IMG/VR virus record: IMGVR_UViG_3300020473_001965
Coordinates: 171,673-235,672 of that record
Direction: 5' to 3' (one strand)
Length of the DNA stretch: 64,000 bases
Part shown: piece after piece, positions 45,601-64,000 of the stretch
Numbering within the stretch: position 1 is the stretch's first letter
Layout of the letters: every line of letters starts with the position of its first letter
The notes under the pieces: model-generated
The model's input: the letters and a program-made list of their open reading frames with translations, nothing else
Databases searched by the model: none
What the model was told of the DNA's origin: nothing
Translations under genes and position numbers: made by a program

Positions 45601-46155
45601 CTATATCATCATTCCGGCTTTGCATATCACATATGCATCAGACATATCGTAAGCTGCCGGATCTAAAATTCTTTGCCCTACACGCGGACCTGACTTAAGA
45701 ATTTTATACGGCCACTCTACCTTTGTATTAGATGATTCTGTATCTTGATCTACCCAAACATGGACCTGCTCTTTAGTTGATAAATCTGATTTTCTATTGA
45801 TTTTCAAACCTAGAGTCTTTCTAGCTGTGTTAACGTTAATATAGACCGGATCTTTTCCTGTCAATACTGACATTTCGTATGATACCATCCCATTGAATCT
45901 GGCTAGTGTCAACAACGTTTTTGCTGAACTTCCACCTGGGCGAAATGCTTGAAGATTCTCTTCAACATAGACACATTCTATCGGATGTGTACGAATAACT
46001 TCCGATAGTTCATCTGAGATGTCTGACACCCTGCTGAATAAACTCTTCTTGTTATCTAACCTAATATATCCTAATCTTATTAGCAAACCCTCAGAGTTAA
46101 ACAGAGAGTATCCCGTACAACTAGTTGAAATGTCTAACCCTAAAAAGAAACCCAT
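45601..46155 (-). CDS. ruvC: RuvC-like Holliday junction resolvase
   Basis: LGLDISTSCTG, VYVEE, DMSDAYVI acidic tetrad. Confidence 0.8.
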   Translation of the reverse strand: MGFFLGLDISTSCTGYSLFNSEGLLIRLGYIRLDNKKSLFSRVSDISDELSEVIRTHPIECVYVEENLQAFRPGGSSAKTLLTLARFNGMVSYEMSVLTGKDPVYINVNTARKTLGLKINRKSDLSTKEQVHVWVDQDTESSNTKVEWPYKILKSGPRVGQRILDPAAYDMSDAYVICKAGMMI

Positions 46156-49100
46156 TAAAAATCTATCTTTGTCTTAAAAAGAAACTCGTCACTACTTCGC
46201 TTGACGACAGGTTGTGCAAAGTTTGTCTTTGTAACAATATTAAAGTTGTCATCATGAAAGTTAATACCAGTAATGTAAACAAAGTCTGTAGACGTATCAT
46301 TGGCATAGATAGATGCTGAAGTGGCTACGAACGTTGGATTAGATGATGAATTTATCTGTCCGGCGCCTGCCTTAACAAGTACTTTCATTACATGAACATC
46401 GTGTTCACCTTTGAAGTCAATTGTATGTTTGTCTTTTCCAAACATGGGGATGTTCGGGGATTTAATGATCATCACACCTTCGTCATAGTAAATGTTGCCC
46501 ACAGACGACCATTTTGCGTGCGGTGTCTTTGAGTCAGCCCTATAGATGTTGCCTCTTGAATTGTCCCTTAACGTCATTGGAACGACACCTTCAGCATTAG
46601 CTATGTCAGATACAGTGGGTGATATAGACCCGGTCAACCCGGGGTCATGCATCCTAAGGGACCCAGGCTTAATTCTTTTTCCGTAAAAGAGGTTAGATGC
46701 ATCAAAGAAAACAACTTGATTTGATGAGTTATCTCTAGTTCGCTGGTATATCGTTAAAACGACTCCCGGCGCTTGACCTAGATTATCAGGATTTGATCCC
46801 ATAATTTGAGAAGCTATTTCTGATTCGTCGTTTGTCAAACTCTCAATTAGAGATGATGTTAGGATTAAGTCATTAAGTGTTACCAGAGACAGATCTAAGT
46901 TTCCTAAGTCATTTACAAATTTACCCATTTCAGCTGTTGACTTCGGTGAGGTGGTATAAGTTCCTGATTTAAGAAGATCAAAATTAGGCTTAAAGTATCC
47001 GTTGTCGTTTGGCAAGACAAGTAGATTTCTGGCCCTTACTGAACCTGTTGCATAAAGATATTGGTTCATTGTCAGTTCTACTTGCGCATCTCCAGAGACC
47101 ACCGATGCTGTCAAGTTAAACATTCGCGGGTATTCTTTTTGAACAAACTCTCTCAAGTAGTTTTCACAGTTTACTAAGTGCCCACCCACACCAAAAGAAA
47201 GTGACACGTTGAACGGATCATCTGTGGTTGATCTCGTTGTTTGAAAAGGTGTTAACAAGTTGTTTCTTTTTCTTGATTCTTTTGTAAATAAAACAGGAAG
47301 GTAAAATAACATGTCTTTGTAGCTTGGTGGCCCTTGGATTGATGACGTTAAAACTTCCTGTGTTGTAAGATATCTGTTGTAAATTCTTATATCGTGAACT
47401 TCTGCATTTAGAGGATTGCTAAAACTAAAGCTTGAAGGATCGCAATTTTCTGCTGCTAGACTCCTTACACCTTCATTTGTATTTGCATTAGGATTGAAAA
47501 ACTGCACCATGTTGGATGATGAGTGCATTAGATTTCCGCCAACAAAGTAATTTCCTATTATTAACCCTTGAGGATCAGCAACACTCGCTGTGGTGGCGTT
47601 TGTGCCTCCGCCAAAATACATTTGTTGACCAGATGGGTTGAAAATAGAAGCAGTCAAGTTTACGACAGGTGGGCGCTCTGATCCTGTTGCATGCAAACCA
47701 TGGTGAAAAATATGACCTGTTCCTGTTATGATCAGTGTGTTTCCAACTGTTCCACCTGTTTTGTGTTTAATAGTAACAGCATTAGATGAAACTGATGTTG
47801 TCAAGCCCAGCCCAGATCTTCTTACTCTATTTGCAAACACACTTGCTGCTTGAGCCCCTGTTGTTAGCCCATAAACAGGTATCCTTCGTGTGTTAGATCC
47901 TGAGACTCCGAACAGTAAGTTTGGAGAATTACTGGTATCAAACTCAAAAAGTCTTACCTTTCCATTCGTCCCGGTCATAACGATGACGGTTCCGTCAGGC
48001 GGTACAGCTCCAAATGTAAAACTAGCACTGGCCAAGATCTTTCCTGTCTTGTTAACGGGCGCTATACTAGCAGACGGAATTGAAAATTCGCCCCTTTGGA
48101 TGCCGTCAATAAGAATTGAGCCAGACCCGGCGTTTAAAGTCCTCGTGCCCCAACGGATTGCAACATGGTGCCAATGATTTTTTTGCAGTGAATTATCATT
48201 TGTTAAAAAGATTAAGTCACCTGGGTAGTTACTAGAACCTCCAGATGTACCCCTGTTGGATGTGTTTGTATAGGCCACGCTTGTTGGCTTTACATCCGCA
48301 CTGTGTGAAAGCTGGAGCATGATTCGAAAAGAAGTGGGCAGACCCTTTTCATCTTTTCTTGACCCGCTTACTACTGATACTGCAAAGGTTGATGACAAGT
48401 GCGTAATGCATCCTGCGACATATGGGTCTGATGCTTTTAACGTTGTTCTTCGTGGGTTTACATAAAAGCTTAAAGTAAATGCCTTAGAAGGGGTATAGGG
48501 GCCATACGTTGTATCATCTTTAAAATAGTTTGGATAAATTAGTGCACTATTAGAAGGAACATATGAAGCAGTGAAGAAGTTAAGTGTTTGATAGTTTGTA
48601 AATGCGTAGTGAGATGTTGGGTTATCAACTCTGTGATACGGCATTATCACGTTTTTTATTACATTCTTTCTACCTGTGTCTTTTGTATATTTGAATGAAG
48701 GTTCAAAACGTATTATCTCCATCGCCTTTTTATTTCTAGCCGACTCTGGATTTGCATGCACTCCAGAGATATACAACTCTATCGCACTTCTAAATTCCCC
48801 CGCATCTGAGCCGCCCGTAAATGTGGAGGGTATTGTTAGGTTCGTAACACTTCCTGAAGACGGGTTTTGATACTGGGTTGAGATGGTTGTGTTCCCAGAA
48901 GCGCCTCCTGTCTTTTGTGTTAAAACAACTGTCGTTGTCGAACCATCTTTAAACTTAGACTTTATGTCAAGCCCAGAAGCTGTGACTTTTTTAAATGCAT
49001 TGTTGAAAGTTGCAGCTGCAGTCGCAGCGGACCCAGTTACGTTGTTTACTGTCACTCTGGTTGCCATTGATGCACTATAAACACTGGTCGGGGAATGTGC

Positions 49101-49436
49101 ATCAAACTCGAATCTAGACGTCTTTCCTTGGGTGTCTGAGACTATTATTATGTCTCCGTCTTGCGGTACTCCTCCGAACGTTATTTCTGCCGACGCTCTT
49201 GTCGGCTGCTTGGCAGAGTCTATGCAATCCAGGCGCAAATCTTCCAAACTATCTGATTGCAGCTTAGTTTCATCAAATGCTGCAATTGATTGCGCCTGCT
49301 TTTCATATGGCGACCTTCTTGCAAAAACGTAAACAGATCCAGTCACTCCCGCAGACGACGATGTGTATGACCTCACCGGATGTGTTGCAAGAGTAACTAA
49401 TTCAAAATTATCTGGACCTAGTTTGATTATCGCCAT
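46155..49436 (-). CDS. virion structural protein with LamG/ConA-like domain
   Basis: FTLSFYVNP, WHHVAIRWG...ILIDG, EVHDIRIYNRYL; two internal repeats; C-terminus paralogous to 49457-50674. Confidence 0.7.
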   Translation of the reverse strand: MAIIKLGPDNFELVTLATHPVRSYTSSSAGVTGSVYVFARRSPYEKQAQSIAAFDETKLQSDSLEDLRLDCIDSAKQPTRASAEITFGGVPQDGDIIIVSDTQGKTSRFEFDAHSPTSVYSASMATRVTVNNVTGSAATAAATFNNAFKKVTASGLDIKSKFKDGSTTTVVLTQKTGGASGNTTISTQYQNPSSGSVTNLTIPSTFTGGSDAGEFRSAIELYISGVHANPESARNKKAMEIIRFEPSFKYTKDTGRKNVIKNVIMPYHRVDNPTSHYAFTNYQTLNFFTASYVPSNSALIYPNYFKDDTTYGPYTPSKAFTLSFYVNPRRTTLKASDPYVAGCITHLSSTFAVSVVSGSRKDEKGLPTSFRIMLQLSHSADVKPTSVAYTNTSNRGTSGGSSNYPGDLIFLTNDNSLQKNHWHHVAIRWGTRTLNAGSGSILIDGIQRGEFSIPSASIAPVNKTGKILASASFTFGAVPPDGTVIVMTGTNGKVRLFEFDTSNSPNLLFGVSGSNTRRIPVYGLTTGAQAASVFANRVRRSGLGLTTSVSSNAVTIKHKTGGTVGNTLIITGTGHIFHHGLHATGSERPPVVNLTASIFNPSGQQMYFGGGTNATTASVADPQGLIIGNYFVGGNLMHSSSNMVQFFNPNANTNEGVRSLAAENCDPSSFSFSNPLNAEVHDIRIYNRYLTTQEVLTSSIQGPPSYKDMLFYLPVLFTKESRKRNNLLTPFQTTRSTTDDPFNVSLSFGVGGHLVNCENYLREFVQKEYPRMFNLTASVVSGDAQVELTMNQYLYATGSVRARNLLVLPNDNGYFKPNFDLLKSGTYTTSPKSTAEMGKFVNDLGNLDLSLVTLNDLILTSSLIESLTNDESEIASQIMGSNPDNLGQAPGVVLTIYQRTRDNSSNQVVFFDASNLFYGKRIKPGSLRMHDPGLTGSISPTVSDIANAEGVVPMTLRDNSRGNIYRADSKTPHAKWSSVGNIYYDEGVMIIKSPNIPMFGKDKHTIDFKGEHDVHVMKVLVKAGAGQINSSSNPTFVATSASIYANDTSTDFVYITGINFHDDNFNIVTKTNFAQPVVKRSSDEFLFKTKIDF

Positions 49437-49456
49437 TATCTACATCTTTTAAAATA

Positions 49457-50674
49457 CTAGAAATCTAAGCGAACCCTGAACGTCACATCCTTTTCATCAT
49501 TCTTTTCAACTGGTCTCGAAAGTTTAGCAACAGCGAGAAGATTGTCATTCGAATCGAACAAACCGACTGTTGTTACGAAAGAGAAAGTTCGCTGGGTTTC
49601 TTCCTGACCCTCATCGATGACAACAATGTCACTATCAGAATCCACAAAAGTCGGATTCGAAGAGTAATTAAACTCATCTGCTGAAGCTCTACAGAAAATC
49701 AGCGTACTATTAATATTGGTAATATTCTGGAAAGTCAACGAAGTGTTAGAACCACTTCCAAACCTTGTTGAACAAATATGATCGCATATATTATCAATTG
49801 AAGCAGACGCCACGAAAGAAGGAATGAACTTAGCGTTTGTTTGCTCAGCTGTATGACCTATGATTGTCTTTCCAGCTGCAATGTAAGTCGTATTGTCATT
49901 CATTGCGTCAATAGATCCGGACATCCTTTGGGATCCGGATGTGACTTTTGCCAAGTCTAATACTGCAATTCCTCGATCGTAGAAGAGCAATCCTACGTTT
50001 CTAGCTGTGTTTGATGCGTCAACAATATTACCTACATTACCACCCACGGTTACTAGCTTATTCGTTGACGATCCCAAGTCAGTAAAGATAGCTGATCCTG
50101 ACTCGGACGTTACAGCCAAGTTAAACGGAGTTTGAACTCCATCATTAGCAGCTGATGCACTTTGGAAAAATTTCATAGCAAACGTTTCACGCTTAATTGC
50201 GTCCCTGGAAAAAAGTCGCTTAAACGACATAAACATCGCTGTATCCATTCCATTTGTTGAGTCAGATGACCCAAAGGGAGATACAAATTGAGATGTTGCA
50301 TTACCTAGTAATAGCTGCGCATATTGTTTGTAAACATTAACTTTTTCCCTCATCATCACAGTCTGAGATGGGAACAGTTTCTTTCCAAAAGAGTCTTCTC
50401 CAGAAGATGCACTATTGACTGTGGACCCTGTGTGATAAAGCCCTACAGTCAAGTCAAACACGGGGTTTGCAGTCTGAAGTGAGAAGTCTTGATCATATAC
50501 AGTCTGGAACAGTGAGGATGTAATACCGGGGCCTACACCTCCCGTAACAAATACTTGATATTTTCTTCGTGTTGTTGATCCTGATATATCCTCTGATATC
50601 ACGTCAACCAGCTGGTTCAAAAACGATCTTGACGTTTTAATATCCGCTGCTGTTAATTCTTTAAAGGTTGCCAT
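49457..50674 (-). CDS. virion structural protein (tail-collar-like C-terminus)
   Basis: ends FVTTVGLFDSNDNLLAVAKLSRPVEK...FRVRLDF. Confidence 0.6.
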   Translation of the reverse strand: MATFKELTAADIKTSRSFLNQLVDVISEDISGSTTRRKYQVFVTGGVGPGITSSLFQTVYDQDFSLQTANPVFDLTVGLYHTGSTVNSASSGEDSFGKKLFPSQTVMMREKVNVYKQYAQLLLGNATSQFVSPFGSSDSTNGMDTAMFMSFKRLFSRDAIKRETFAMKFFQSASAANDGVQTPFNLAVTSESGSAIFTDLGSSTNKLVTVGGNVGNIVDASNTARNVGLLFYDRGIAVLDLAKVTSGSQRMSGSIDAMNDNTTYIAAGKTIIGHTAEQTNAKFIPSFVASASIDNICDHICSTRFGSGSNTSLTFQNITNINSTLIFCRASADEFNYSSNPTFVDSDSDIVVIDEGQEETQRTFSFVTTVGLFDSNDNLLAVAKLSRPVEKNDEKDVTFRVRLDF

Positions 50675-50687
50675 CTTTGCTCCGTAA

Positions 50688-51383
50688 TTAGCTGCTTATT
50701 TGAACTTCGAAATCATAAACTGAGCCGTCTTGGACTCCTGTTGCCTTAACAAAGGTGCTGATTTTTGAATCTGAACCTCCGTAAATTGTAAAATGATTGT
50801 CTGTAAGTGATTTTACTTCAAGAGTCATAGTTAATTTTGATCCACCGATAGATGTCACCGCCTCATCTCGAAGCAATAGGTATGTTGCCATATTATTGAA
50901 ATCTATATTGTCGGGAGACTGCCCTTGAACTTGCAAGAAAAGATTGCTCATTGTGACTATAAAAGCTTGATTTCTTAATTCTACATCAATAGAATCTTCA
51001 TTATCTATCTCTTGCGTCAACGTTATTGATCTTGTTGTGTTTGATGTTCTTCCCATCGTAACAATAGATCCGGCAACTCCTTCCCCAGATAATGATAAAC
51101 TTGGCAACCTCAAAATACTTGGGTTCGATAAGCTAATTAGCTTGTATTTTAATGCCTGATCGCCATTTGTCAATGCTTCGAAAATAGGTGTGTTCTTTTC
51201 TACTTTTTCTTTACCAACAGTTCGACCGTACTTTTTAATCACTCCATAATCAACTTCATCATCGCCTAGCGCGAATTTAGTAATTGAAAAAGAGCCGTCA
51301 TTCCGAGAAAGGAACTTTCGGCCGGTGTCTGTTAGAACTGCGTCTAAGATTATATTGTTTGTGCTGTGATCGAGAAACCCCAT
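50688..51383 (-). CDS. virion structural protein (tail-collar-like N-terminus)
   Basis: AVLTDTGRKFLSRNDGSFSITKFALGDD. Confidence 0.6.
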   Translation of the reverse strand: MGFLDHSTNNIILDAVLTDTGRKFLSRNDGSFSITKFALGDDEVDYGVIKKYGRTVGKEKVEKNTPIFEALTNGDQALKYKLISLSNPSILRLPSLSLSGEGVAGSIVTMGRTSNTTRSITLTQEIDNEDSIDVELRNQAFIVTMSNLFLQVQGQSPDNIDFNNMATYLLLRDEAVTSIGGSKLTMTLEVKSLTDNHFTIYGGSDSKISTFVKATGVQDGSVYDFEVQISS

Positions 51384-51460
51384 GGATTACTTCTCCTCTT
51401 AAATTAATTATACATTTACCAAAAAATGTTAGTAAAACTATTTATTCTCTTCATTGTAAA

Positions 51461-53383
51461 CTAAGATGACCTTCTATTAAATTTTCTTCTTTGAGCCTTC
51501 CTTCTTCTCTTTCTTCTTCTAGCTCTCCGTGTAGCCCTTCTAGCCCTGACAAGTGCTAAATCTTCTGTTTCTTCTTTTCCGCGAGGTCTTGTATCATCTA
51601 TTTCTATTGATATTTTACGCTCTTTTTGCTGATCTACATTTATAAACTGAAGCTGATAGGAACCTGACTTGTCCCGTGGGCTTCGCTTTGTTGTTTTGAT
51701 CAGCTCTAGATCACTCCCAGCCTTGTCGGTTATCTTTAAGTATTCAGGATCAAAATAAATATGCACTCTTCTATGACCTGAGTCTCTTATAGTGTCTACA
51801 AACAGGTCTTGTTTTAAATAAAGGTTTGGATATTGTTTTGGTGCACCGGAAGGTGATATTTCTTTTGTTACCAGCCTATTGTTGGCTCTGTCAAAAGTTA
51901 CTTCAAACTGATTAGAATAATTTGAAGTAAAGTTTCTTGCGTCAATCGAACATACTGCGTATATAAACTTAGAGTCCATTGTAAAGTCGTTATCTCTATA
52001 GTTAAGTGCGGGATGCTTTAAATAAATTCTTCTACTCTCATCAATATCTTCGAGGTCGGGATGACGCTGGGTGCTGTCATCAAAATCTAACATTGCTACT
52101 AATTCAAAGGGTTCTAGAATGCTTTTTCTTCTAAAAACTTGAAACTTTTTAATATCGCGCTGGGGGTTTACAGGAAAATTCCACATTAGGTTCAGCGTGT
52201 TAGACGTAAAATGCCAGACTGGTTTAAAATCAGCTGGTTCACTTGGAGGCATAGTTTCTATGCACTCTACTATTGCTCTGTTACTAGGCTTGGACATTAT
52301 TAACATTGTTGACGACATAATATCTGTTTGATCTTCAGATGGCGCCTGGAAGTCTACTTGTGCTACAGTTTTGATTTGATAAACGTATGTTTTTCCATAT
52401 TTTACACGCGTATCAATAAGCCTGGTTGATGTTGGATTGTTTATTATAATGTCTTTTATTTTAACGAGCTCATATGTCTCGTCATCTACCTCGTATTTTT
52501 CTATGATGTACCCAATCACTCGTGATTTAGTATCTGCTTGACCTGCATCTATCATCCTGACTCTTATGGGTTCTGCAATTAGATCGTATTCTTCTGGGTC
52601 TATTTCGTTTGGTTTTACACCTGTTAGAGCTTCTTCAGTAATTGCTTCACTTAATTCGTCTAAATCTGCCATTTCATCAGCAAATATTGATGACGGATCT
52701 GATGTTGCTGAATCTATTAGTACATCGGCAAACTTATTATTTAACTGTATTGCTAGTGTTACATCTCTGGCATTGGGTGATTTCTTTCTTGAGAGTTCTT
52801 CTCTTTTTTCTTCGTCAACAAATCGTGCTCCCGTTGCCTGTGCATTCATTGCATCAGCAAGAAATTTTGGAGTCACCTCTGGGCCGGTTCTTTGATTTAG
52901 CTCCTTTGCTTTGTCAGTTGGGGATGCTGGATTTTTTTCTTGTGTCAGATTTAATGTCATGTTCAAAAAGGGCGTTAACTTATCGTCAAGCCCCGAATCT
53001 TGAACTACTAAACCTGTGAAACTGTTATTAGAAATAGAAGCTTCATCTTGTATCTCGTCTATGTGATCTTGTATTCTAAGAAACCTTATTCTCTTAGACT
53101 CTTCTACGCCTGGTACGTTTACTTTTAGGGGGCGCCATGTCAAAGCGATGTACCGTGGTACTTTTCTTTCTAGTTCTTTCTTAGCAGCTGGAGACATTCG
53201 TCTACTAGAGACGAGATTCTGTCCTGACCTTCTTAGAATTTTTCTAGCATTTGGATCATACTTGTCGCTTGTTGTCTCGTCTGCTTCGAAAAAGTTATAA
53301 TAAAATTTGGCGCGGACTCTAGAGACTTCAGGAACATCGACAAACGACACAAGAGAGGATGGGTATGTTAGTTTTCTAGGCAT
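51461..53383 (-). CDS. putative virion protein with FN3/Ig-like domains and Arg-rich C-terminus
   Basis: DTRVKYGKTYVYQI, PPSEP...LNLMWNFP...FQVFRR, YIYAVCS-type FN3-like motifs. Confidence 0.55.
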   Translation of the reverse strand: MPRKLTYPSSLVSFVDVPEVSRVRAKFYYNFFEADETTSDKYDPNARKILRRSGQNLVSSRRMSPAAKKELERKVPRYIALTWRPLKVNVPGVEESKRIRFLRIQDHIDEIQDEASISNNSFTGLVVQDSGLDDKLTPFLNMTLNLTQEKNPASPTDKAKELNQRTGPEVTPKFLADAMNAQATGARFVDEEKREELSRKKSPNARDVTLAIQLNNKFADVLIDSATSDPSSIFADEMADLDELSEAITEEALTGVKPNEIDPEEYDLIAEPIRVRMIDAGQADTKSRVIGYIIEKYEVDDETYELVKIKDIIINNPTSTRLIDTRVKYGKTYVYQIKTVAQVDFQAPSEDQTDIMSSTMLIMSKPSNRAIVECIETMPPSEPADFKPVWHFTSNTLNLMWNFPVNPQRDIKKFQVFRRKSILEPFELVAMLDFDDSTQRHPDLEDIDESRRIYLKHPALNYRDNDFTMDSKFIYAVCSIDARNFTSNYSNQFEVTFDRANNRLVTKEISPSGAPKQYPNLYLKQDLFVDTIRDSGHRRVHIYFDPEYLKITDKAGSDLELIKTTKRSPRDKSGSYQLQFINVDQQKERKISIEIDDTRPRGKEETEDLALVRARRATRRARRRKRRRKAQRRKFNRRSS

Positions 53384-56300
53384 TAGTCATCTCCGTTCAT
53401 AAACTGTGTAAAAAGATTTCTTCTTCGGGTTCCAGTTGGAGTTTCAGCAACGGCTGCTTCCTCTGCGCCTCTCCTTGACTCACTTTTAGAGGCTGATATC
53501 ATTTCAACAGCAACGAAATATTCATAAATAGATACTTTGCCTTCTGACTTTCTTCTTGGTTTCAAATACCACCTACCATTACGCCGGATGATCGCTTTTC
53601 GTCGACGAGCGTTTCTAAATGCTCGCCTTCCCGACTTGGTAGAATTTGTCTTTTTCACATCTATCGCAAAGTCATCAGGATCTACTGGTAAACAGTAAAC
53701 TCTATCAAATAGTGTTGGCTGGAGAACTGTATGCTGGTTATTTTTGGCTCTAAACAGTGTTGTTTTGCAAAAAGACTCTATTTGTTTTATTGTAGCTTGA
53801 TGCTCTTTATACTCTTGTTCTGTTTCTATGTCTTCATCAGTCAAGTAGATGCTCATAACGTCGGACAATAATTTCTTTGTTCTTTTATCACTATCAATCC
53901 TGCTTTTTACAGGTTGCGCGGCGCTTGCCAAGAAAAACTCCTGCTCATCAATATTGATTCCTGTCATTAGTCTGATGTAATACTTTAGTGCTTGATCATA
54001 GATTCCGTTTCTAACGATTGCATAACGATTTGCACCCTTGGGAAGTACTTTAAAATCATCGCTCTCAATCATAGTCTTGTAATCTAAACCATCTTTGCCT
54101 ATTCTCCCTCTGCTGTCATATTCTTGATAGATAAGCTTTTCTCTGACGATGTCGGAAAATTTATCTGTCAATCTAATTTCATCAAATGAATCAACTGGAG
54201 AGAGGTGATATCTGTCACAAAATGTATAGTATCTATGAGAAAACACAAGATCATCAAATTGTTGATCGCGCTTATAGACCCTGAATCTTATCATGTAATC
54301 TTTTTTATACGGGTCATAAAGCGCTGACCTTCTTGAGTCATCGACCATTTCTGTCTGGAGTCTTTTGACCATCCCTAAGGGAAGCCCTACGCACAGAATG
54401 TTTAGATTATTAGCTCTACGTGACCTAAATCTTCTCTGCCTTAATGTTTGATCCATCAAAGCAGATTGACCGAACTTAAATCTGTCATAGTGCGGCACAG
54501 GAATCGATTTCAATTCTTCTGTGTTAGTTGCAATAGACTCTAACTGCTTTTGCTTAAGCGCAATTTGATGCTCATTCAATCCGGCCACTATTACGGGCCC
54601 CCCGGGGGTGTTCAGAAGCGCGTTTAATAGTTTTTGGTGTCTTCTCGAACCTTCTGTGTCAAACCATCGCTGTAATCGAATAGCTTCCCAAACAAGATTC
54701 CTCCCATACATTCTAAGCATTCTAAGGCGCTGTTGAAGAAAGATTCTTTCCTCTTCTAGAGCGTCTTCTGAACCTTCGAAAAACCCTATTGCATCTTCGT
54801 ATACTTCTTCCTCATAGTCAGATTTATGAGATTGATCATACTGATCTGTTGTTTGTCCGTCTATGGGTATCCAGTCGACAATACCTGTTGATATATGACC
54901 TGAAGCAGCTACACCTGCCCGAAAATATGTCATGCTGTTCCTGTGCCAGATCTTGCTTCCATTAATTGCTGACTCTTGTTTTTTCTCGAACTTAACAAGT
55001 GCAGATTCGTAAATTTGGTTTACAATCGTTAAACATGCATCAAAATACAACGCTTGAAAATGATCTTCTGGAATCCCCTTGTTTCTAGACATTCTTACGG
55101 GATTTTCCGGGGTCGCGGCGTTAAAGATATCTGGAACAGTGTCCATAGTTAAAGCCCTAAGACCTTTAGCTGCTTGTTGAACTAAATCTAATCTATCTTG
55201 TGCTTGTTGCTCCATGGTGTCTGCGGCTTTATATTGTGAAAGGGCTTTGTTTCTGTGAGTCTCTCCTATTGTGTTAACCATCTTCGCGATTGTACCGTGA
55301 CCCGGAGAGAAGAGCATGGCCATACCGATCTTCGCGGAGGTTGAGCTCATCGATGGGTATGACATGTTGGAGTGTGGGGGCGGTGGGGGCGGTGTCATTT
55401 TGCCAACAAGCTTAAACATCTTTCGGGCTTTCTGCATGTTTTTGTCAGCTTTTCTTCTTAGTTGGCCAGCAGTAACTGTCGCCATTCTAAGTAATCCTCG
55501 TGCACCCATAACATCATCGTTCAACTCATTGCCCAAGCTTCTTGCTGCAGCAAAAGCTGCCGGATCTACCCTCCTCTTTGCTGTCGTGAGATGCGATCTA
55601 TACCCCCGCATCATCACAGCGGCGAAAGCTCCTAACTCAGTTTCTGGATCGCAAAAATCCATTGCGGCCTTTACCGAATCTGTCTTGACTTGGGGGCCCA
55701 TGTCTTTGTCTTTGTTCTTCCCGCGGCGAGCACCTGTTTTTCCACCAACAACTCTCGATGTATTTTTTCCATTCTTCATTAATCTCGAAGGAATTCTATG
55801 AAGAAGGATGCGGCACAAATCTTTTATGTGTCGAGCACACTCGTAAGGCGTTTGTAGTTCATTAACATCTATCGTAAAGGGCCTTTTTGATCGCTTTCTG
55901 AGGTTCATGTGGCGCATGCGAGCGGCTACCGGATTCTCGGGACCAGGGTTTGCTAATTTAGCTAGCAGCCCCTGTCTTTCTAGTTGCTGCTTCAACTCTT
56001 CGTCTTCTTCTAGCATTTCTCTTAATGCTTCTTGCTGCTTTAGGAGTTCTCTTCGATAAGCAGTCTTTATAATCTGTATTACGCAGAATCTTGCTCGATC
56101 GCTTCTCTCAGTCAGCTCTGAAATTAGACCTATTCTAGATCTTTCTGGCTTTCGCCTTGAATCGGCTACGGTCCACCTAACTGTGTTTGTCATCCTTCTC
56201 AAGACAGAGTCACCATGGAAGTCTGCGTGGTCACCATAAAGTTTTGATGGCCTTCTTGCCGACTTGCGGCCGCCTGTGCCGGGGAGGTAATACATTGTGC

Positions 56301-57801
56301 TGGCACATACTGTCGCGGTGAGTAGTGATTGCATAAATTCCCTGGCAAAGTCAGCGTAACCACTAACATCAAATGCTCCAGATTCAATTATGTGATCTGC
56401 CAGAGCTACTGCCCCGGGGGCGTGAATATCATCTCCATCTCGAGATCGAACATACGAAGACTCAAAAGGTAGGCATGATACTCCCTCGTCTTCCGATACT
56501 AATCGAAGAGCACTTGAAGCGCCTTCAAGCCCTGCGTCTTCGTCTAGATAGTCGGCAGGTGAACCAAAGGTATGACTAAAAAACTCTTGAGGCCCCGGAA
56601 CAACACCGATACGATCTACAAGCTTATCATGCACTACAGGTAAGGCTCTAGCAATAGAATACTTCGACTCTAGTGAAATAGCGTTTACTAAAACTCTTAT
56701 CTTGTCTGTATCGTCATCAGGCAATTCACTTAATTTGTCTTTGTAATTTTCAAATGGATCCATCTCACTGTTAGCGTCAATAGTAAATGTTACTGCGCCG
56801 ATGCCGCCCGATTTCACAGTTTCATCCACATTAAACGGATGAGAATCTGATGCCCTTACCTTCGCATTCTTATCTACAAGGACTGGAGAGTGATGTTCAA
56901 GTGTGTTCTTAACGTCTTGCAATATCTGGGCGATGACTTTTGTGTTGCTGAAGTTCACATAGTTTGATTTAGAATATCCTGTCTGAGTCAGCAATTCTGC
57001 TGCTGTTCCCACAGTTTGGGGCGCTGACTTTGCTCTCTTTAATGCTCTTGAAGCGTTATTAACCCGTGTTGCATAAAAGTCAGAATCCCCGCCTGAAATC
57101 CTTGCAGCATCAGCCTTCATTTTAGCATTGTCAAGTCTTTTTTGTGCCCTGCTTATTCTCATCATTCTTCGACGAGCTACGGCGGCGTTATATCTTCCTA
57201 CAATCCGCTCCAGCTGGGGTTTTGCATCTAACATATACTTTGTATAGTTTACACGACGCATGATTCTTCCCAAATCATGTACGTGCGTCTTTGTTTCAGC
57301 AATCACACTGTCATACTCTTCAAGTATTCTATCTATTTCATCTGCTAGTGCATCGTTCTCTTTTAGCCTATCTAAGATCTCACCGTTATTGTCAAGGTAG
57401 GTCTGTCGGAGGCTTTTTTGTGCTTCTAAGACATCATGAATTCTACCGATTTTGGTTCTTCCATTAGATCCGTAAGCGGGTTGGAAATTCATTTGAAAAA
57501 TAATTTCAGGACGTAGTTTTGACACACCTCTTGACTCAAGATAGACATCAGACTTCTTAGATATCTCTAGTTTCTTTCTGTTATGATTAACCCTTTCCTT
57601 TCGTCTTCGATTTCTTCTTGCAAACTTAAATTTTCCATTACGCGTAACCCTTAGCTTGCCTCTTGCCCTCTTGTCTCCGGCAAAAGAACGCATAACTATT
57701 TTTCTCTGAGTTTTTCTGGCTCTTTTCTTTCGTCTTCTAGATCGATTTGACTGTGTGTTGAATTTTACTTTCTTCAACTTTAAAGGCTTTTTGACAGGCA
57801 T
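53383..57801 (-). CDS. large hypothetical protein with Arg/Lys-rich N-terminus
   Basis: 1472 aa, translationally coupled to both neighbours. Confidence 0.6.
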   Translation of the reverse strand: MPVKKPLKLKKVKFNTQSNRSRRRKKRARKTQRKIVMRSFAGDKRARGKLRVTRNGKFKFARRNRRRKERVNHNRKKLEISKKSDVYLESRGVSKLRPEIIFQMNFQPAYGSNGRTKIGRIHDVLEAQKSLRQTYLDNNGEILDRLKENDALADEIDRILEEYDSVIAETKTHVHDLGRIMRRVNYTKYMLDAKPQLERIVGRYNAAVARRRMMRISRAQKRLDNAKMKADAARISGGDSDFYATRVNNASRALKRAKSAPQTVGTAAELLTQTGYSKSNYVNFSNTKVIAQILQDVKNTLEHHSPVLVDKNAKVRASDSHPFNVDETVKSGGIGAVTFTIDANSEMDPFENYKDKLSELPDDDTDKIRVLVNAISLESKYSIARALPVVHDKLVDRIGVVPGPQEFFSHTFGSPADYLDEDAGLEGASSALRLVSEDEGVSCLPFESSYVRSRDGDDIHAPGAVALADHIIESGAFDVSGYADFAREFMQSLLTATVCASTMYYLPGTGGRKSARRPSKLYGDHADFHGDSVLRRMTNTVRWTVADSRRKPERSRIGLISELTERSDRARFCVIQIIKTAYRRELLKQQEALREMLEEDEELKQQLERQGLLAKLANPGPENPVAARMRHMNLRKRSKRPFTIDVNELQTPYECARHIKDLCRILLHRIPSRLMKNGKNTSRVVGGKTGARRGKNKDKDMGPQVKTDSVKAAMDFCDPETELGAFAAVMMRGYRSHLTTAKRRVDPAAFAAARSLGNELNDDVMGARGLLRMATVTAGQLRRKADKNMQKARKMFKLVGKMTPPPPPPHSNMSYPSMSSTSAKIGMAMLFSPGHGTIAKMVNTIGETHRNKALSQYKAADTMEQQAQDRLDLVQQAAKGLRALTMDTVPDIFNAATPENPVRMSRNKGIPEDHFQALYFDACLTIVNQIYESALVKFEKKQESAINGSKIWHRNSMTYFRAGVAASGHISTGIVDWIPIDGQTTDQYDQSHKSDYEEEVYEDAIGFFEGSEDALEEERIFLQQRLRMLRMYGRNLVWEAIRLQRWFDTEGSRRHQKLLNALLNTPGGPVIVAGLNEHQIALKQKQLESIATNTEELKSIPVPHYDRFKFGQSALMDQTLRQRRFRSRRANNLNILCVGLPLGMVKRLQTEMVDDSRRSALYDPYKKDYMIRFRVYKRDQQFDDLVFSHRYYTFCDRYHLSPVDSFDEIRLTDKFSDIVREKLIYQEYDSRGRIGKDGLDYKTMIESDDFKVLPKGANRYAIVRNGIYDQALKYYIRLMTGINIDEQEFFLASAAQPVKSRIDSDKRTKKLLSDVMSIYLTDEDIETEQEYKEHQATIKQIESFCKTTLFRAKNNQHTVLQPTLFDRVYCLPVDPDDFAIDVKKTNSTKSGRRAFRNARRRKAIIRRNGRWYLKPRRKSEGKVSIYEYFVAVEMISASKSESRRGAEEAAVAETPTGTRRRNLFTQFMNGDD

Positions 57802-60344
57802 CAGTAATTTCTCCCTTGTCGTCTTCTCTTAGAGGCAATCCCAGAGGATATTAACTGCCCTATCCGGGTAGTCTCCCCTCTTGTAAAGTCTACGTAAACC
57901 GGCGTCACCTTGAATTCGATAGGGCCGCGAATTCTAGGTGTAAATCTGTCAATTAAAACGTATCGATTTCTACCTGGAATAGATACAGTGTGAAAAATAG
58001 GTAAAGAGGACTTTCTTAACTCGACTGAAACTATAAAGTGATCAATTTTTGAAGCGTCTCCGCGGATTGACCAGGTTAGCTTATTTTCATATCTATTAAT
58101 TTTTTCGACATCTCCCCGCCTTACTTCAGGTAATTGATCTTTGAAGCTTGCATCTATTGTTTTGACCGATCCTGTCTTCGCTGCATTAAAGATCGTATTT
58201 TTTCCAGTATTTCTAGATCTACCTCGGCGAGGTAAAAGCGTACCTGTCCTCAAAGCTTTTCTTGAAAGCTTTTTAGCAATAGCCACCCTGTACTTCCTTT
58301 TAGTTCTTCGATCAGTTCTAACTATTCGAGAGCGCCTCAAGAGCGCAGCCGGGTGTATTCTACACCCTGTAACTACATACCTGTATTCATTTCCGCTCTC
58401 GAGAGGTTTTAATCGACTTGTTCTGGAAAGTCTTCGATCGTCAAAAATAGAACTAGAGGAGGGATCAAATATGTTGAATTGTTCTCTCTCGCCTGTTGTT
58501 AGGTTGAACCTTTCGATCGAAAAGACAGTCAAAAAGTCTGCATTGTCTCTCATTTCTTCATTTTGCTCATCTGTATTGTAAAATCTAGCTGTACCAGACC
58601 TTTTTTGATAACGCTTGAGCATATTTGTAAGATTAGTTCTTCCAGAAGTCTGTGTCTCATCTGTCACTATTTTCATTCTTACGTTTGGAGAGCCATGCTT
58701 AGATATTCTTACATCTTCTAGCTCAAACTCAACTTCAGAATCTAGTTTTTGATACTCAACAAATGCTGTGTCGATTGTCCTTACTTTTAAACCGTCTAGA
58801 AAAGTTAGGTCGACTATGTACTCATAGACCCTACCGTCTCGAACAGAAGTGTCAATAAACTGCATTGACTCACTATCAATAATATGTTCGGGCGTGTCTA
58901 CATCTTTTAATTCTCTAAAAAGTACTTTAAATTTTTTCTCTTTAGCAGACAAGTCTCGTCGAAGAATTGACATTGTTATTGCTGATGTATCGAAATTTTT
59001 AACCTCTATACTTAGCCCATCAACGTCTGGTTGAAGAAATATCGAGCTAAACTTATTTCTAACTGCCCTATTTTCAGTTCCTATTTTACATGGCGGAGCT
59101 ACAACAGATCGAAACCCATAACCTCTTCTTCTACCTCGTACAGGTATTGCTCTATAGATTATTGGATTAGTGTTTTGAACATTATCAACAATTCTTAAGA
59201 ATCTTGTTCCGGTTGTCCTTGATCTTCCTCTCTTTCTAATCCTATATCTTCCTACAAGCTCATAGTCGGAATTGATTAAAATATCAGAATCATTAATAAT
59301 TCTTCTATATACTTCGATTGAATTTGCTTTTTTGTCTCGTTGTCTTATCTCTAAAACATTTTTTCCCGGTACACAATTAACATATCGAATAGAGGGTGCT
59401 CTTCTAGGGTATATGTAATCTGTATAAAACTTTGGATGGTTTAGTCTGTGAACTTCTCTTTGAAGAATTGCCCCTTCGCGATCAAGCAATTCAATAACTA
59501 CTGAAAGTTTTCTAGCTTTTCGAAACACTTTGTTACGAATGTTAATTCTTTTTCTTACAGTTACGTACTGCTTTTTTCGTCTAACAAGGACGGGTATCAG
59601 TTCATTGGGAGGTAACTCTTCTAGAGCAGTTGTGTTGTTTATTTCTGTGAGATCTTTTCTCAACGTCTTGATTATTTTGCTTCGTCGAGCATCTTTCTCC
59701 ATTTTTGCTGTTGTTAAGATACCCGTTATCGCATCATCTTGAGTGTTTATTTTGTCTCTTGACATTACTAAGTTTGCAGGGTCTTCATTGAACTTATTGA
59801 TAGCTTCAAGAGAAAAACTCTGAACGTTTGAGGAGTCTTGAGTGCTTAGGTCTTCTTCAGTTATCAAAGAGTTTACATAGCTTGTCTCTATGTTCTCATC
59901 AAGCAGATCAGAAACTGTCTTAAACTCATAAGTCCTTATATTCGGCAAAAGTGTTATAGCATCTTCTTCATCGAACCTATCAACATATCTTGCAATCTCA
60001 TTATTAAACCTGCTTGTTATGTCGATATGTCTTCGAGCAATTATGTCTCTTCTTCTTGCCCTTATTCTATCTTTAGTCTTTGGCCTATCCACTAAAAGAG
60101 CATCAATGGCAGACGCTGGTGTGAGACCTCCTGGGCCGTCAAATGCGGATTTTCTCTTTTTAGATGTGGGATATCTCAGAGTAATTCTTAGCTTAGATGC
60201 CCTTAGTTTTATGGCTCTTATTTGATTTACTCTGACTGCAAATTCATAGGTAAATCGCCTGCGACGTCTACTATAATTTACTAAGTTGATGAATTCATCA
60301 TCAACATCAATTGCGTCTATTTCTTGTGATGTAAAAGCCTTCAT
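57801..60344 (-). CDS. Arg-rich putative virion protein with FN3-like repeats
   Basis: 847 aa; IEVYRR...YRAIPV, YEYIVDL, YRYVVTG, LTWSI...IDHFIV. Confidence 0.55.
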   Translation of the reverse strand: MKAFTSQEIDAIDVDDEFINLVNYSRRRRRFTYEFAVRVNQIRAIKLRASKLRITLRYPTSKKRKSAFDGPGGLTPASAIDALLVDRPKTKDRIRARRRDIIARRHIDITSRFNNEIARYVDRFDEEDAITLLPNIRTYEFKTVSDLLDENIETSYVNSLITEEDLSTQDSSNVQSFSLEAINKFNEDPANLVMSRDKINTQDDAITGILTTAKMEKDARRSKIIKTLRKDLTEINNTTALEELPPNELIPVLVRRKKQYVTVRKRINIRNKVFRKARKLSVVIELLDREGAILQREVHRLNHPKFYTDYIYPRRAPSIRYVNCVPGKNVLEIRQRDKKANSIEVYRRIINDSDILINSDYELVGRYRIRKRGRSRTTGTRFLRIVDNVQNTNPIIYRAIPVRGRRRGYGFRSVVAPPCKIGTENRAVRNKFSSIFLQPDVDGLSIEVKNFDTSAITMSILRRDLSAKEKKFKVLFRELKDVDTPEHIIDSESMQFIDTSVRDGRVYEYIVDLTFLDGLKVRTIDTAFVEYQKLDSEVEFELEDVRISKHGSPNVRMKIVTDETQTSGRTNLTNMLKRYQKRSGTARFYNTDEQNEEMRDNADFLTVFSIERFNLTTGEREQFNIFDPSSSSIFDDRRLSRTSRLKPLESGNEYRYVVTGCRIHPAALLRRSRIVRTDRRTKRKYRVAIAKKLSRKALRTGTLLPRRGRSRNTGKNTIFNAAKTGSVKTIDASFKDQLPEVRRGDVEKINRYENKLTWSIRGDASKIDHFIVSVELRKSSLPIFHTVSIPGRNRYVLIDRFTPRIRGPIEFKVTPVYVDFTRGETTRIGQLISSGIASKRRRQGRNY

Positions 60345-61279
60345 TATTCAAAAACCAACGTAAACATGTTAACAAAAGTGTACGAATCTTTACTGTCAGG
60401 AAATACTTTTCCTACGAAAAAAACGTGCTTTTCAGGAAAATCTTCATCTCCTGTGACAAATTCTCCAAAATCAATGACATCAAGCTTTTTAAAAGTTGTC
60501 TGGCCGATTTCAAAAAACTGCCCTATTAAATTATTCTCTAGTGACGTTTCATAGAACGTAATAGTTTCTTTCTCCCTTCCCTTAAGCTCAGCAGCTAGAT
60601 CTTCGTACTTCATCATCGGATTTTGACCTAAGTCTGGATAATCTCCAAGAGGTAGTTTGTCACCTACTGTGTTTGTTGCAGCATTTACAGGAGGCAAATA
60701 TAAAAAGTTTGCAACATGAGAAAGGCGTTTATCTTGAAAAAGAGATTCGACATTGTCAATAGAAGTCTCGCTAAGGTCACCTTGCTCAAAAGGTGCGTCA
60801 GGCCTGATGTTGAACTTCATGCTAAGTTTGTCAATATTGAACTTATTATGTCCTAGAAATGCGTTTTTTGTCCCGATAACATTGTTCTTTTCAAAACTGT
60901 CAATTGTTCCAGACAGCATGTCTGAAGCAGCACTATTAAACTGTATTGAATTTTTTACAGCGCTCTGTTTTTTGGTTCCACTTGAACCAGAAAGCACCTT
61001 GCTTCCTAAAGATGCCGCGCCCTCTGCAGAAAAGGGCAGCATAAATCCGCTATCATCTGTCTCAAAAGTTAGCTGATCATGTATTGTATTGGCAGCTTCG
61101 AAGAACAACCTTGACTGTGCGTCAGAAGAGCCACTCACTATATCACGCTCATAAAAAGTATGTGTATCAGTAAATGAAGCGTACTCTATCTTCAATTTTC
61201 CAGCAGCAATCTGCTGTCTCCCACTATAAGTGACAATTGAATCTAGTATTCGTGTCTTTTTATCTAGTATGCCTGACAT
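60344..61279 (-). CDS. virion structural protein, N-terminus paralogous to 50688-51383
   Basis: MSGILDKKTRILDSIVTYSGRQQIAAGKLKIEYASFTD versus MGFLDHSTNNIILDAVLTDTGRKFL. Confidence 0.55.
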   Translation of the reverse strand: MSGILDKKTRILDSIVTYSGRQQIAAGKLKIEYASFTDTHTFYERDIVSGSSDAQSRLFFEAANTIHDQLTFETDDSGFMLPFSAEGAASLGSKVLSGSSGTKKQSAVKNSIQFNSAASDMLSGTIDSFEKNNVIGTKNAFLGHNKFNIDKLSMKFNIRPDAPFEQGDLSETSIDNVESLFQDKRLSHVANFLYLPPVNAATNTVGDKLPLGDYPDLGQNPMMKYEDLAAELKGREKETITFYETSLENNLIGQFFEIGQTTFKKLDVIDFGEFVTGDEDFPEKHVFFVGKVFPDSKDSYTFVNMFTLVFE

Positions 61280-62913: not shown

Positions 62914-64000
62914 TAGCCGACGTCCTCTTCAACTATGACAGCTGAATCTAGTATTGAATCATCAAATGGGTAGGGTCTGTTTCTAAACTTGCCGTCTCTG
63001 TCTGCATCAAAGAAGGGAAGAGAGGATGAAGCGACCGGGCTTAAGTTTTGCGAGTATGTTCGAACAGGCTTGATTCTACGATCTGTTATTGTACTTACAA
63101 ATCTGATATGCACTGGACCTCGTGTCACAAAGTTATTTGACCTCCTGCGACGGCGGATCCTAAAAAATAATCTCCTTCGCCTTAATCTAGGGGTTCGGAC
63201 AAAGAATCTTGTGTAAGGTCTTTGTTCAAGCATATCTCTATACTGCCCGTATGTGTCATGTCGATAAACGGCAGTAGTGTTCATCGGTTCAGTATTAATC
63301 AGCCCATACCTGAAACCTGAAGCACCTTTATGCTTTGTCGATCTCCTTATGCATGCCATCGTGCCCGTTGTATGACCCGCTGCGTTGGCTCTGATAAATC
63401 CTAAATATCTGTCGTCGGCTACATGTGGTGCGGCGTCTTTTGGATTGGTTTGGACCGCATCAGAACCATCATTACCTGTCAAGAAACTCTTGTGAAAGCC
63501 GTTGCGGCCGCGTGGATTTGAAGAATTAGAATTTACAAATCTAATTTTAGCATTATCACTATAAGACCCAAAAGGAGTAAATAAAGCATCCTGGGCCGGG
63601 TCGGCACCGATTCTAAATAGCGTTTTTCTTACCTGTTTTGGGTTAGACATGTACATGTTTGGTTGGCGGGCTCCAAGTGAACCTGCTTTTGCTGTTGACC
63701 TTATATCAGTTCCCGAGTAGACTGTCAACATGTATCTTTGAGGTTTAGCTATTCTCCTTGGGCTCATCTCAAAAGGAAATGCCAGAGATCCTGAGTACTG
63801 CCCTTCGTTGATATAGGAAGCTGTAGAGGCACCTAGTGATTGAGACGTAATTTTACTATGTGGATCGTCAGGGCCTTCGATATAATTGTAATGCTCGCCG
63901 CGGATTACTTCAACACCGTTAGGGCTTCGAGATATACCGTCTTTAGGACCCTTGGCATTTGTAAGAATAGAAGATCCTCTTACCCAACCTGCACGATCAG
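62913..64000 (-). CDS. hypothetical virion protein, 5' end beyond the window
   Basis: the frame of track ORF 62913-63767 stays open to position 63998 (DRAGWVRGSSILTN...AFPFE-MSPRR), so the gene is partial. Confidence 0.7.
   Translation of the reverse strand, partial: DRAGWVRGSSILTNAKGPKDGISRSPNGVEVIRGEHYNYIEGPDDPHSKITSQSLGASTASYINEGQYSGSLAFPFEMSPRRIAKPQRYMLTVYSGTDIRSTAKAGSLGARQPNMYMSNPKQVRKTLFRIGADPAQDALFTPFGSYSDNAKIRFVNSNSSNPRGRNGFHKSFLTGNDGSDAVQTNPKDAAPHVADDRYLGFIRANAAGHTTGTMACIRRSTKHKGASGFRYGLINTEPMNTTAVYRHDTYGQYRDMLEQRPYTRFFVRTPRLRRRRLFFRIRRRRRSNNFVTRGPVHIRFVSTITDRRIKPVRTYSQNLSPVASSSLPFFDADRDGKFRNRPYPFDDSILDSAVIVEEDVG

What the first reader, a model, noticed from the sequence alone, without database searches (positions are those of the whole stretch)
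46155..61279. Tail-collar (P2 gpH N-terminal / DUF3751-like) domain apparently split between separate genes
Seen: two proteins begin with the first half of the pattern (AVLTDTGRKFL...ITKFALGD at 51383; SIVTYSGRQQIA...IEYASFTD at 61279) and two others end with the second half (VTTVGLFDSNDNLLAVAKLSRPVEK...FRVRLDF in 49457-50674; ITGINFHDDNFNIVTKTNFAQPVVK...FKTKIDF in 46155-49436). Known, from memory: P2 gpH carries VITTAG...ITTMAVGD and RELGLYDDAGTLIAVAN in one ~150-aa domain. Inference: the beta-sandwich is completed in trans, giving two 'plug and socket' heterodimers that dock fibres, reminiscent of donor-strand complementation.
Basis: partly seen in the sequence, partly recalled or inferred. 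Interest (0 to 1): 0.6.

Follow-up and report, generated by a model that had tools for sequence, protein, structure and literature searches.

The report
Split tail-fibre attachment domain in jumbo phage
In a large uncultured marine myovirus, the domain that P2-type phages use to fix tail fibres to the baseplate appears to be divided between neighbouring genes and is predicted to be rebuilt when the two proteins bind, which gives a first functional reading for two very widespread "hypothetical" phage protein families.

Summary
In the whole 235-kb phage genome, only the 231-aa and 311-aa proteins carry the N-terminal motif, and only the 405-aa and 1093-aa proteins carry the C-terminal motif. No protein carries both.

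- **No direct Pfam match.** PF12571 does not hit any of the four proteins.
- **Profile-profile comparison does link them.** The C-motif matches the second half of PF12571 (probability 92-93%). The N-motif matches the first half more weakly (53-55%). A genome-paired virtual fusion aligns colinearly over PF12571 positions 3-131 (94%, P 1e-7).
- **Reciprocal genome searches agree.** They pick out gpH in P2, and the 405-aa and 231-aa proteins in this genome.
- **Fold and complex predictions agree.** The most conserved part of the 231-aa protein (residues 1-86) does not fold alone. In a complex prediction it packs onto the last 80 residues of the adjacent 405-aa protein (ipSAE 0.78, best control 0.18).
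- **The gene pair is conserved.** It is adjacent in thousands of metagenomic relatives and in phages immuto, Mel-JY01 and RM378. There it sits where gene H sits in P2. One lineage has fused the two genes.

The partners of the 311-aa and 1093-aa proteins were not tested. Distant relatives have 1 N-motif gene with 2 to 5 C-motif genes, so "two fixed heterodimers" is not general. I read this as a new split variant of a known domain.

The parts
50688..51383 (-). 231-aa adaptor protein, a member of a family with more than 6900 metagenomic relatives
   Evidence: ORF. 6978 homologues, none annotated. No Pfam or PHROG hit. AlphaFold2 model mean pLDDT 70.3.
51099..51383 (-). N-motif segment of the 231-aa protein (residues 1-95): the proposed first half of the PF12571-like domain
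   Evidence: It is the most conserved part of the family (0.70 vs 0.38 mean pairwise identity). pLDDT is below 50 as a monomer. It forms the interface in the complex prediction, residues 10-95. HHalign to PF12571 positions 7-38: probability 53-55%, P 1e-4.
50691..51110 (-). Ig-like beta-sandwich domain of the 231-aa protein (residues 92-231)
   Evidence: pLDDT about 90. Generic Ig-like matches with Z 8.0-8.6, such as pilus chaperones, invasin and GH2 accessory domains.
49457..50674 (-). 405-aa protein that carries the C-motif
   Evidence: ORF. 1824 cluster representatives at E <= 1e-3. Model pLDDT 87.4, pTM 0.81. No PDB relative by Foldseek; best VIA-align Z is 5.0. BFVD and ESM Atlas give only uncharacterised viral proteins.
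49460..49699 (-). C-motif region of the 405-aa protein (residues 326-405): the proposed second half of the PF12571-like domain
   Evidence: HHalign to PF12571 positions 64-129: probability 92-93%, P 3-7e-7. It forms the interface in the complex prediction. The motif ends at the C-terminus in 110 of 113 representative homologues.
46155..49436 (-). 1093-aa fibre-like protein with a concanavalin-A/LamG domain (47985-48245), an internal 100-aa duplication (about 48876-49196 and 47724-48032) and the C-motif at its end (46158-46487)
   Evidence: Laminin_G_3 E 9e-8. C-terminus vs 405: E 2e-9. C-motif HMM E 1.6e-13. Internal repeat 41% identity, E 3e-18.
60344..61279 (-). 311-aa protein with the second N-motif (residues 1-75 = 61055-61279) and a conserved C-terminus that is not a C-motif
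   Evidence: 741 homologues. N-terminus vs the 231 family: probability 93.8%. Its C-terminus vs the C-motif or PF12571: P 0.18-0.64.
51461..60344 (-). Three conserved upstream structural genes (640, 1472 and 847 aa) with arginine-rich tracts, syntenic with the pair
   Evidence: The order 1472-640-231-405-1093-RuvC recurs in viral contigs. No family hits apart from a weak fn3 match.
61297..63998 (-). 538-aa tail-fibre-like protein, and the C-terminal part of a 2219-aa LamG protein that is cut by the contig end
   Evidence: phrog_18345 tail fibre, E 4e-8. The longer contig L220 shows the full 2219-aa gene, preceded by a 1195-aa LamG protein.

Best explanation
The window is the structural arm of a T4-related jumbo myovirus. 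The 231-aa protein is a small adaptor with two parts: an Ig-like C-terminal domain, and a highly conserved N-terminal segment of about 90 residues that cannot fold on its own. The adjacent 405-aa protein ends in a three-stranded beta unit. When the two proteins meet, the adaptor's N-segment zips onto that unit. Together they form one composite domain that is the split counterpart of PF12571, the N-terminal 'collar' domain that anchors P2-type tail fibres to the baseplate wedge. The bodies of the two proteins then act as a large insertion between the two halves of that domain. The 1093-aa LamG protein carries the same C-terminal unit and the 311-aa protein the same N-segment, so they probably use the same docking principle. 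Predicted by computation: the motifs, their homology to the two PF12571 halves, and the 231-405 interface. Inferred: baseplate attachment, stoichiometry, and the partners of 311 and 1093.
For: Virus type
- Two sheath genes, tape measure, hub, gp23-like capsid protein, portal and terminase mark it as a myovirus.

Homology to PF12571
- 405 C-terminus: HHalign probability 92-93%.
- 405 and 1093 families combined: 84.5%.
- N-motif: 53-55%.
- Virtual fusion built from 75 genomes: 94.2%, P 1.1e-7, colinear over PF12571 positions 3-131. The swapped order scores lower, and the reversed control gives P 0.52.
- A PF12571-type HMM ranks the 405-aa protein first and the 231-aa protein third among 1547 ORFs of this genome.
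- The reverse searches rank gpH first among 364 P2 ORFs with all five HMMs. The motif-specific matches fall at the expected gpH positions (about 6-37 and 90-110), except for the 231-only N-segment HMM.

Binding
- The 231 monomer model has residues 1-86 at pLDDT below 50, while the rest is near 90.
- Complex prediction: ipSAE 0.78 vs best control 0.18. That mark was reached by 58 of 80 solved complexes and by 2 of 110 mismatched pairs. Partner pLDDT is 82-84 and the runs agree in at least 89% of contacts. The interface is 231:10-95 with 405:326-405.
- The interacting termini are the most conserved parts of both families.

Genomic linkage
- The two genes are adjacent in 78 of 82 loci and in immuto, RM378 and Mel-JY01.
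- In immuto and Mel-JY01 they follow gp25-like, gp6-like and large wedge genes, which is the place of H in P2's V-W-J-I-H operon.
- One lineage, seen in two samples, fuses 231 and 405 through a TGA-to-TTA change.
Against: - PF12571 itself gives no hit, even at E <= 10 on the isolated termini or at E <= 1 genome-wide.
- Support for the N-half is modest: 30 aligned columns, probability about 54%.
- No solved PF12571 structure was found, so I could not check that the predicted trans interface matches the cis contacts in gpH.
- The complex score is the model's own confidence and was obtained with my own alignments.
- The 405 C-terminal sheet is already confident in the monomer model, so the N-segment may decorate that unit rather than complete it.
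- Baseplate wedge genes were not found in this contig, so the baseplate context rests on relatives.
- Relatives with 1 N-motif and 2-5 C-motif genes show that a C-motif protein does not always have its own N-partner.
Confidence: 0.6

Rival explanations
1. The 231-aa and 405-aa proteins do form an adaptor-fibre complex through their conserved termini, but the resemblance to PF12571 is a short convergent strand motif. The module would then be an unrelated docking device, not a split gpH collar.
For: There is no Pfam hit. The confident HHalign cores are only 25-40 columns for the C-half and 28-30 for the N-half. No solved PF12571 structure is available for a fold test. The best PDB matches of the 405 model are other small phage tail domains at Z 5 or less.
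Against: Two independent halves each match the correct half, in the correct order, and the fused profile scores higher than either half alone. Whole-genome searches in both directions give reciprocal top hits. The pair sits at the same position as gene H, after the wedge genes, in relatives.
Confidence: 0.2
2. There is no trans-completion. The N-segment of 231 (and of 311) forms its own homo-oligomeric collar or binds a baseplate wedge protein. The C-motif unit is a self-sufficient trimerisation or attachment domain. The predicted heterocomplex would be an artefact of beta-strand pairing.
For: The 405 C-terminus is confidently folded in the monomer model. Relatives carry up to five C-motif proteins for one N-motif protein. 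Structure predictors often pair exposed strands.
Against: ipSAE is 0.78 against 0.00-0.18 in three controls, with about 275 confident contacts. Invariant residues of both families concentrate in the interface: 12 of 17 invariant columns of the 231 family. Strict adjacency and a natural fusion link the two genes.
Confidence: 0.15
3. The motifs are chance similarities among unrelated beta-rich phage proteins and have no shared function.
For: Single-sequence BLAST between the 231 and 311 N-termini gives only E 0.046.
Against: Profile comparisons reach P 1e-7 while controls stay non-significant. The motifs always sit at the extreme termini and are the best-conserved parts of families with thousands of members.
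Confidence: 0.03

Closest known systems
PF12571 (Phage_tail_fib, formerly DUF3751): the N-terminal collar domain of P2 gpH and R-pyocin tail fibres
   Same: Both conserved strand motifs are present, in the same order. Profile-profile probability reaches 94% for the joined halves. In related phages the genes lie right after the baseplate wedge genes. The literature assigns this domain to fibre-baseplate attachment (PMC6363177).
   Different: Here the domain is divided between two polypeptides. Its second half is at the C-terminus of the larger protein, not the N-terminus, so the protein bodies are topologically an insertion rather than a C-terminal shaft. The Pfam model does not detect it. The same paper says the domain is absent from T-even myophages, yet this phage is T4-related by its capsid, sheath and portal.
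Donor-strand complementation in chaperone-usher pili
   Same: A fold is finished by a segment supplied by another polypeptide. A strand-to-strand pairing lies at the centre of the predicted interface. The 231-aa protein also carries an Ig-like domain that resembles pilus chaperones at Z about 8.
   Different: The supplied piece is about 85 residues with predicted helices and strands, not one strand. The Ig-like domain of the 231-aa protein is complete by itself and is not the part being complemented. There is no sequence relation.
T4 gp10-gp11-gp12: consecutive baseplate-periphery genes that share a fold and attach fibres
   Same: Consecutive paralogous genes share one terminal module and sit next to the wedge and fibre genes. 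There are two such genes here and five in Mel-JY01.
   Different: No sequence signal was found in the T4 gp10-gp24 region. No T4 baseplate chain appears among the structural matches of the 405 model.

Membership tests
PF12571 (Phage_tail_fib / DUF3751) | Match to the Pfam HMM above the gathering score (23 bits) | tested here: not met
   No hit for the four proteins at E <= 1, for the isolated termini at E <= 10, or in the whole 235-kb genome at E <= 1.
PF12571 (Phage_tail_fib / DUF3751) | Remote, colinear profile-profile similarity to the whole domain | tested here: met
   C-half probability 92-93%, N-half 53-55%, joined halves 94.2% over positions 3-131. Reciprocal top hits in both genomes.
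PF12571 (Phage_tail_fib / DUF3751) | One contiguous domain of about 150 aa at the N-terminus of a tail-fibre protein | tested here: not met
   The halves lie in different proteins, and the C-half is at a C-terminus. The two genes are fused only in the L017/L026 lineage, with about 500 residues between the halves.
PF12571 (Phage_tail_fib / DUF3751) | Gene placed directly after the gp25/gp6/gp7-like wedge genes (P2 order V-W-J-I-H) | tested here: inconclusive
   Met in immuto and Mel-JY01. Wedge genes were not found in this incomplete contig.
PF12571 (Phage_tail_fib / DUF3751) | Same three-dimensional fold and trimeric assembly | not testable with these tools
   No solved PF12571 chain was found.
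Chaperone-usher donor-strand complementation | An incomplete Ig fold completed by a single strand from another chain | tested here: not met
   The Ig-like domain of 231 is complete (pLDDT about 90). The complementing part is residues 10-95, with predicted helices at 19-26 and 57-63.
T4 gp10/gp11/gp12 baseplate-periphery proteins | Sequence or fold similarity to gp10, gp11 or gp12 | tested here: not met
   HMM searches of the T4 gp10-gp24 region are non-significant. PHROGs gives nothing. No T4 chain appears in the fold searches.

The most novel reading that the evidence does not exclude
A large, abundant clade of T4-related large and jumbo phages uses a modular 'shared socket'. One or two small adaptor proteins supply the missing half of the fibre-attachment domain to a set of interchangeable distal proteins (2 to 5 per genome), each ending in the same C-terminal half. 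Receptor-binding modules could then be swapped or multiplied without changing the baseplate. On this reading the contiguous PF12571 collar of P2-like fibres is the fused relative of this two-gene system.
Probability: 0.3. Interest if true: 0.7.

Novelty: new variant of a known kind. Interest (0 to 1): 0.55.

Why it matters
- **It names two large unannotated families.** The 231-aa family has more than 6900 clustered relatives and the 405-aa family more than 1800 cluster representatives. Both come from ocean and other metagenomes, often on contigs of 200-370 kb, and neither has any annotation. A testable role for them, as a two-piece fibre-attachment module, helps in reading the host-recognition apparatus of uncultured jumbo phages.
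- **It gives a natural example of domain fission and fusion in a phage tail.** It would extend the P2-type fibre collar into the T4-related lineage, from which it was thought absent.
- **It suggests a practical handle.** If the docking half is common to several distal proteins, it could be used to exchange receptor-binding parts in cultured relatives such as Flavobacterium phage immuto or Microcystis phage Mel-JY01.

Tried and rejected
- **Direct family searches.** Pfam and PHROGs on the four proteins and their termini gave nothing.
- **Sequence searches of the PDB.** Single proteins and the profiles A2, A5 and A7 found no relative and no solved PF12571 chain.
- **Fold searches.** Foldseek against the PDB with the 405 model gave nothing below E 0.018. 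VIA-align's best match was Z 5.0 to a phi812 baseplate chain, with other small phage tail domains at Z 4.6 or below, which is too weak to use. BFVD, the ESM Atlas fold search and the ESM Atlas feature search returned only uncharacterised viral proteins.
- **First attempts at a PF12571 alignment.** The viral-contig scan with P2 gpH returned only sequences at least 96% identical, which were of no use for a profile. The genome-contig scan returned 72-90% identical enterobacterial copies. I obtained diversity through a PF12571 search of 201 genomes.
- **The genome search on P2 and T4.** Runs with A7 and A8 found no candidates in the first look. I repeated the test with unfiltered hmmsearch in Python.
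- **Idea that the 311-aa protein holds a complete domain.** I suspected a degenerate C-motif at its conserved C-terminus. HHalign gave P 0.18-0.64, so I rejected this.
- **Idea that 405 or 1093 hide an N-motif at their N-termini.** Rejected at P 0.43-0.56.
- **Search for wedge genes in this contig.** A Baseplate_J search gave only a 13.9-bit hit inside a 2908-aa ORF. GPW_gp25 and BLAST with the immuto and Mel-JY01 wedge proteins gave nothing.
- **Literature.** I found no paper that combines tail fibre, baseplate and strand complementation. The RM378 search returned seven papers, none of which I read, so I have no virion proteomics for this pair.
Full report
**What the window is.** Every sizeable ORF lies on the minus strand. 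PHROGs identifies a terminase, portal, prohead protease, a gp23-like capsid protein, two tandem tail-sheath genes, a baseplate hub and a tape measure. The window is the last 64 kb of a 235,672-bp virus record estimated to be 87% complete. The nearest cultured relatives by capsid protein are Microcystis phage Mel-JY01 and Flavobacterium phage immuto; a 484-kb uncultured phage is also close. It is therefore a T4-related jumbo myovirus. The finding covers its fibre and baseplate-periphery genes. On the minus strand the order is: the C-terminal end of a 2219-aa LamG protein, then proteins of 538, 311, 847, 1472, 640, 231, 405 and 1093 aa, then a RuvC-like gene.

**Check of the observation.** The strings quoted from P2 gpH lie inside PF12571, residues 1-151.
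- The C-termini of 405 and 1093 are homologous (BLASTP E 2e-9).
- The N-termini of 231 and 311 are barely similar as single sequences (E 0.046). Their family profiles match at 93.8% probability, P 1.8e-7, and a joint alignment has nine invariant columns.
- Across all 1547 ORFs of the genome, the N-motif occurs only in 231 and 311 and the C-motif only in 405 and 1093.
- No protein has both halves. The N-termini of the 405 and 1093 families and the C-termini of the 231 and 311 families give P > 0.18 against the other motif.
- None of 150 representative 405 homologues contains an N-motif, and the C-motif ends at the C-terminus in 110 of 113 of them.

**Relation to PF12571.** The Pfam model does not detect these proteins. 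I built a diverse PF12571 alignment (A5) from a search of 201 genomes and compared profiles.

| Query profile | Result against PF12571 |
|---|---|
| 405 C-terminus | positions 64-129, probability 92-93%, P 3-7e-7 |
| 405 + 1093 C-motif | probability 84.5%, P 7e-6 |
| 231 N-segment | positions 7-38, probability 55%, P 1.2e-4 |
| 231 + 311 N-motif | probability 53% |
| 311 N-segment alone | P 0.014 |
| Virtual fusion (N-segment + C-terminus, paired from 75 genomes) | colinear over positions 3-131, probability 94.2%, P 1.1e-7, score 49.5 |
| Same fusion in swapped order | score 37.4 |
| Same fusion against the reversed profile | P 0.52 |

Two whole-genome tests agree with this.
- A PF12571-type HMM ranks the 405-aa protein first and the 231-aa protein third among this genome's 1547 ORFs.
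- All five HMMs built from this phage's families rank gpH first among the 364 ORFs of P2. The motif-specific matches fall at the expected gpH positions, except for the 231-only N-segment HMM. The same HMMs find nothing in T4's gp10-gp24 region.

I take the homology as probable. It is solid for the C-half and modest for the N-half.

**Do the halves come together?**
- The 405 model is confident (pLDDT 87.4). Its N-terminal strand packs against the C-terminal strands.
- The 231 model has a confident Ig-like sandwich at residues 92-231. Residues 1-86, the most conserved part of the family, are below pLDDT 50.
- In the complex prediction the median ipSAE is 0.78 and the best of three controls is 0.18. 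That mark was reached by 58 of 80 solved complexes and by 2 of 110 mismatched pairs. Partner pLDDT is 82-84 and the runs share at least 89% of contacts.
- The interface is 231:10-95 with 405:326-405 plus 405:1-12. The tightest contacts are 231:34-41 against 405:367-373, which are the two motif strands.
- Twelve of the 17 invariant columns of the 231 family, and half of the near-invariant columns of the 405 family, lie in this interface.
- This is a prediction made with my own alignments. It is not a measurement.

**Genomic support.**
- The 231-like and 405-like genes are adjacent in 78 of 82 loci examined. The order 1472-640-231-405-1093-RuvC recurs.
- Distant lineages keep the pair with a longer adaptor of 314-354 aa that has the same N-segment.
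- In immuto and Mel-JY01 the pair follows gp25-like, gp6-like and very large wedge-type genes and precedes fibres and spikes. That is the place of H in P2's V-W-J-I-H operon.
- In one lineage, seen in two samples, the stop codon of the adaptor gene is TTA instead of TGA and the 27-nt spacer is in frame. The result is a single 671-683-aa protein with the N-motif first and the C-motif near the C-terminus, followed by a tail of 10-22 residues.
- The complex prediction places the adaptor's C-terminal residues 217-222 and the first seven residues of 405 among the contacts. That fits with such a fusion being tolerated.

**What remains open.**
- Counts of N-motif to C-motif genes are 2:2 in this genome and in four 309-369-kb relatives. 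They are 1:2 in immuto and in the 484-kb phage, about 1:1 in RM378, and 1:5 in Mel-JY01, where five consecutive proteins end in the C-motif.
- Two dedicated pairs are therefore plausible in this clade. More generally, one adaptor may serve several C-motif proteins, or some C-motif units may work without it.
- No solved PF12571 structure exists in the PDB copy, so the fold comparison is missing.
- Wedge genes were not found in this incomplete contig.

**Most likely mechanism.** The adaptor's N-segment and the C-terminal unit of the fibre-like protein assemble into one PF12571-like attachment domain. The Ig-like domain, the 405 body and the LamG-bearing 1093 body project from it. Attachment to the baseplate is inferred from what the literature says of PF12571 (PMC6363177) and from gene order. 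It is a split-domain arrangement rather than classical donor-strand complementation.

**Novelty.** I found no description of a split PF12571. Both families are unannotated in every library searched. I rate this as a new variant of a known kind and of moderate interest.

Noticed in passing
window 17630-21097 and 21140-24322 (minus strand): Two tandem, very long tail-sheath paralogues (1155 and 1060 aa). Both match phrog_23 only in their C-terminal third. A myovirus with two sheath genes is unusual.
   Followed up: no
window 51461-60344 and 62913-63767 (minus strand): The 640-, 1472-, 847- and 284-aa products carry long arginine/lysine tracts, for example at the N-terminus of the 1472-aa protein and the C-terminus of the 640-aa protein. 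That is odd for tail or baseplate proteins. It may point to DNA- or RNA-binding, or to ejected proteins.
   Followed up: no
window 47724-48032 and 48876-49196 (minus strand, inside the 1093-aa gene): An internal duplication of a domain of about 105 aa (41% identity, E 3e-18). The second copy overlaps the downstream part of the LamG domain match.
   Followed up: partly
L017:5260-7275 and L026:73-2124: A natural fusion of the adaptor and 405-like genes, caused by a TGA-to-TTA change at the adaptor's stop codon plus an in-frame spacer. It occurs in two metagenome samples. The 405-like stop is also read through for 10-22 codons.
   Followed up: yes
L217 (Microcystis phage Mel-JY01) 9001-18243 and beyond: One N-motif protein is followed by five consecutive proteins (358, 357, 955, 722 and 593 aa) that all end in the C-motif.
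   Followed up: partly
window 28915-29619 (minus strand): A galactose-3-O-sulfotransferase-like gene (phrog_3347, E 3e-12) sits directly downstream of the major capsid gene, inside the structural block.
   Followed up: no
window 29724-31607 (minus strand): The major capsid protein is 627 aa. The gp23-like match covers only residues 358-609, so there is an N-terminal extension of about 350 residues of unknown nature.
   Followed up: no
G000:C1 about 154 kb (outside the window); L220:1-8367: The genome encodes giant proteins. One is a 2908-aa ORF with a faint Baseplate_J match. Upstream of the window's 538-aa gene lie a 2219-aa and a 1195-aa LamG protein. The window's 5'-open ORF is the tail end of the 2219-aa protein.
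   Followed up: partly
L002 (Rhodothermus phage RM378) p127, record 116125-116283: The gene just downstream of the C-motif protein p128 gives a weak N-motif hit (E 0.002). RM378 may therefore have the order N-motif, C-motif, N-motif.
   Followed up: no
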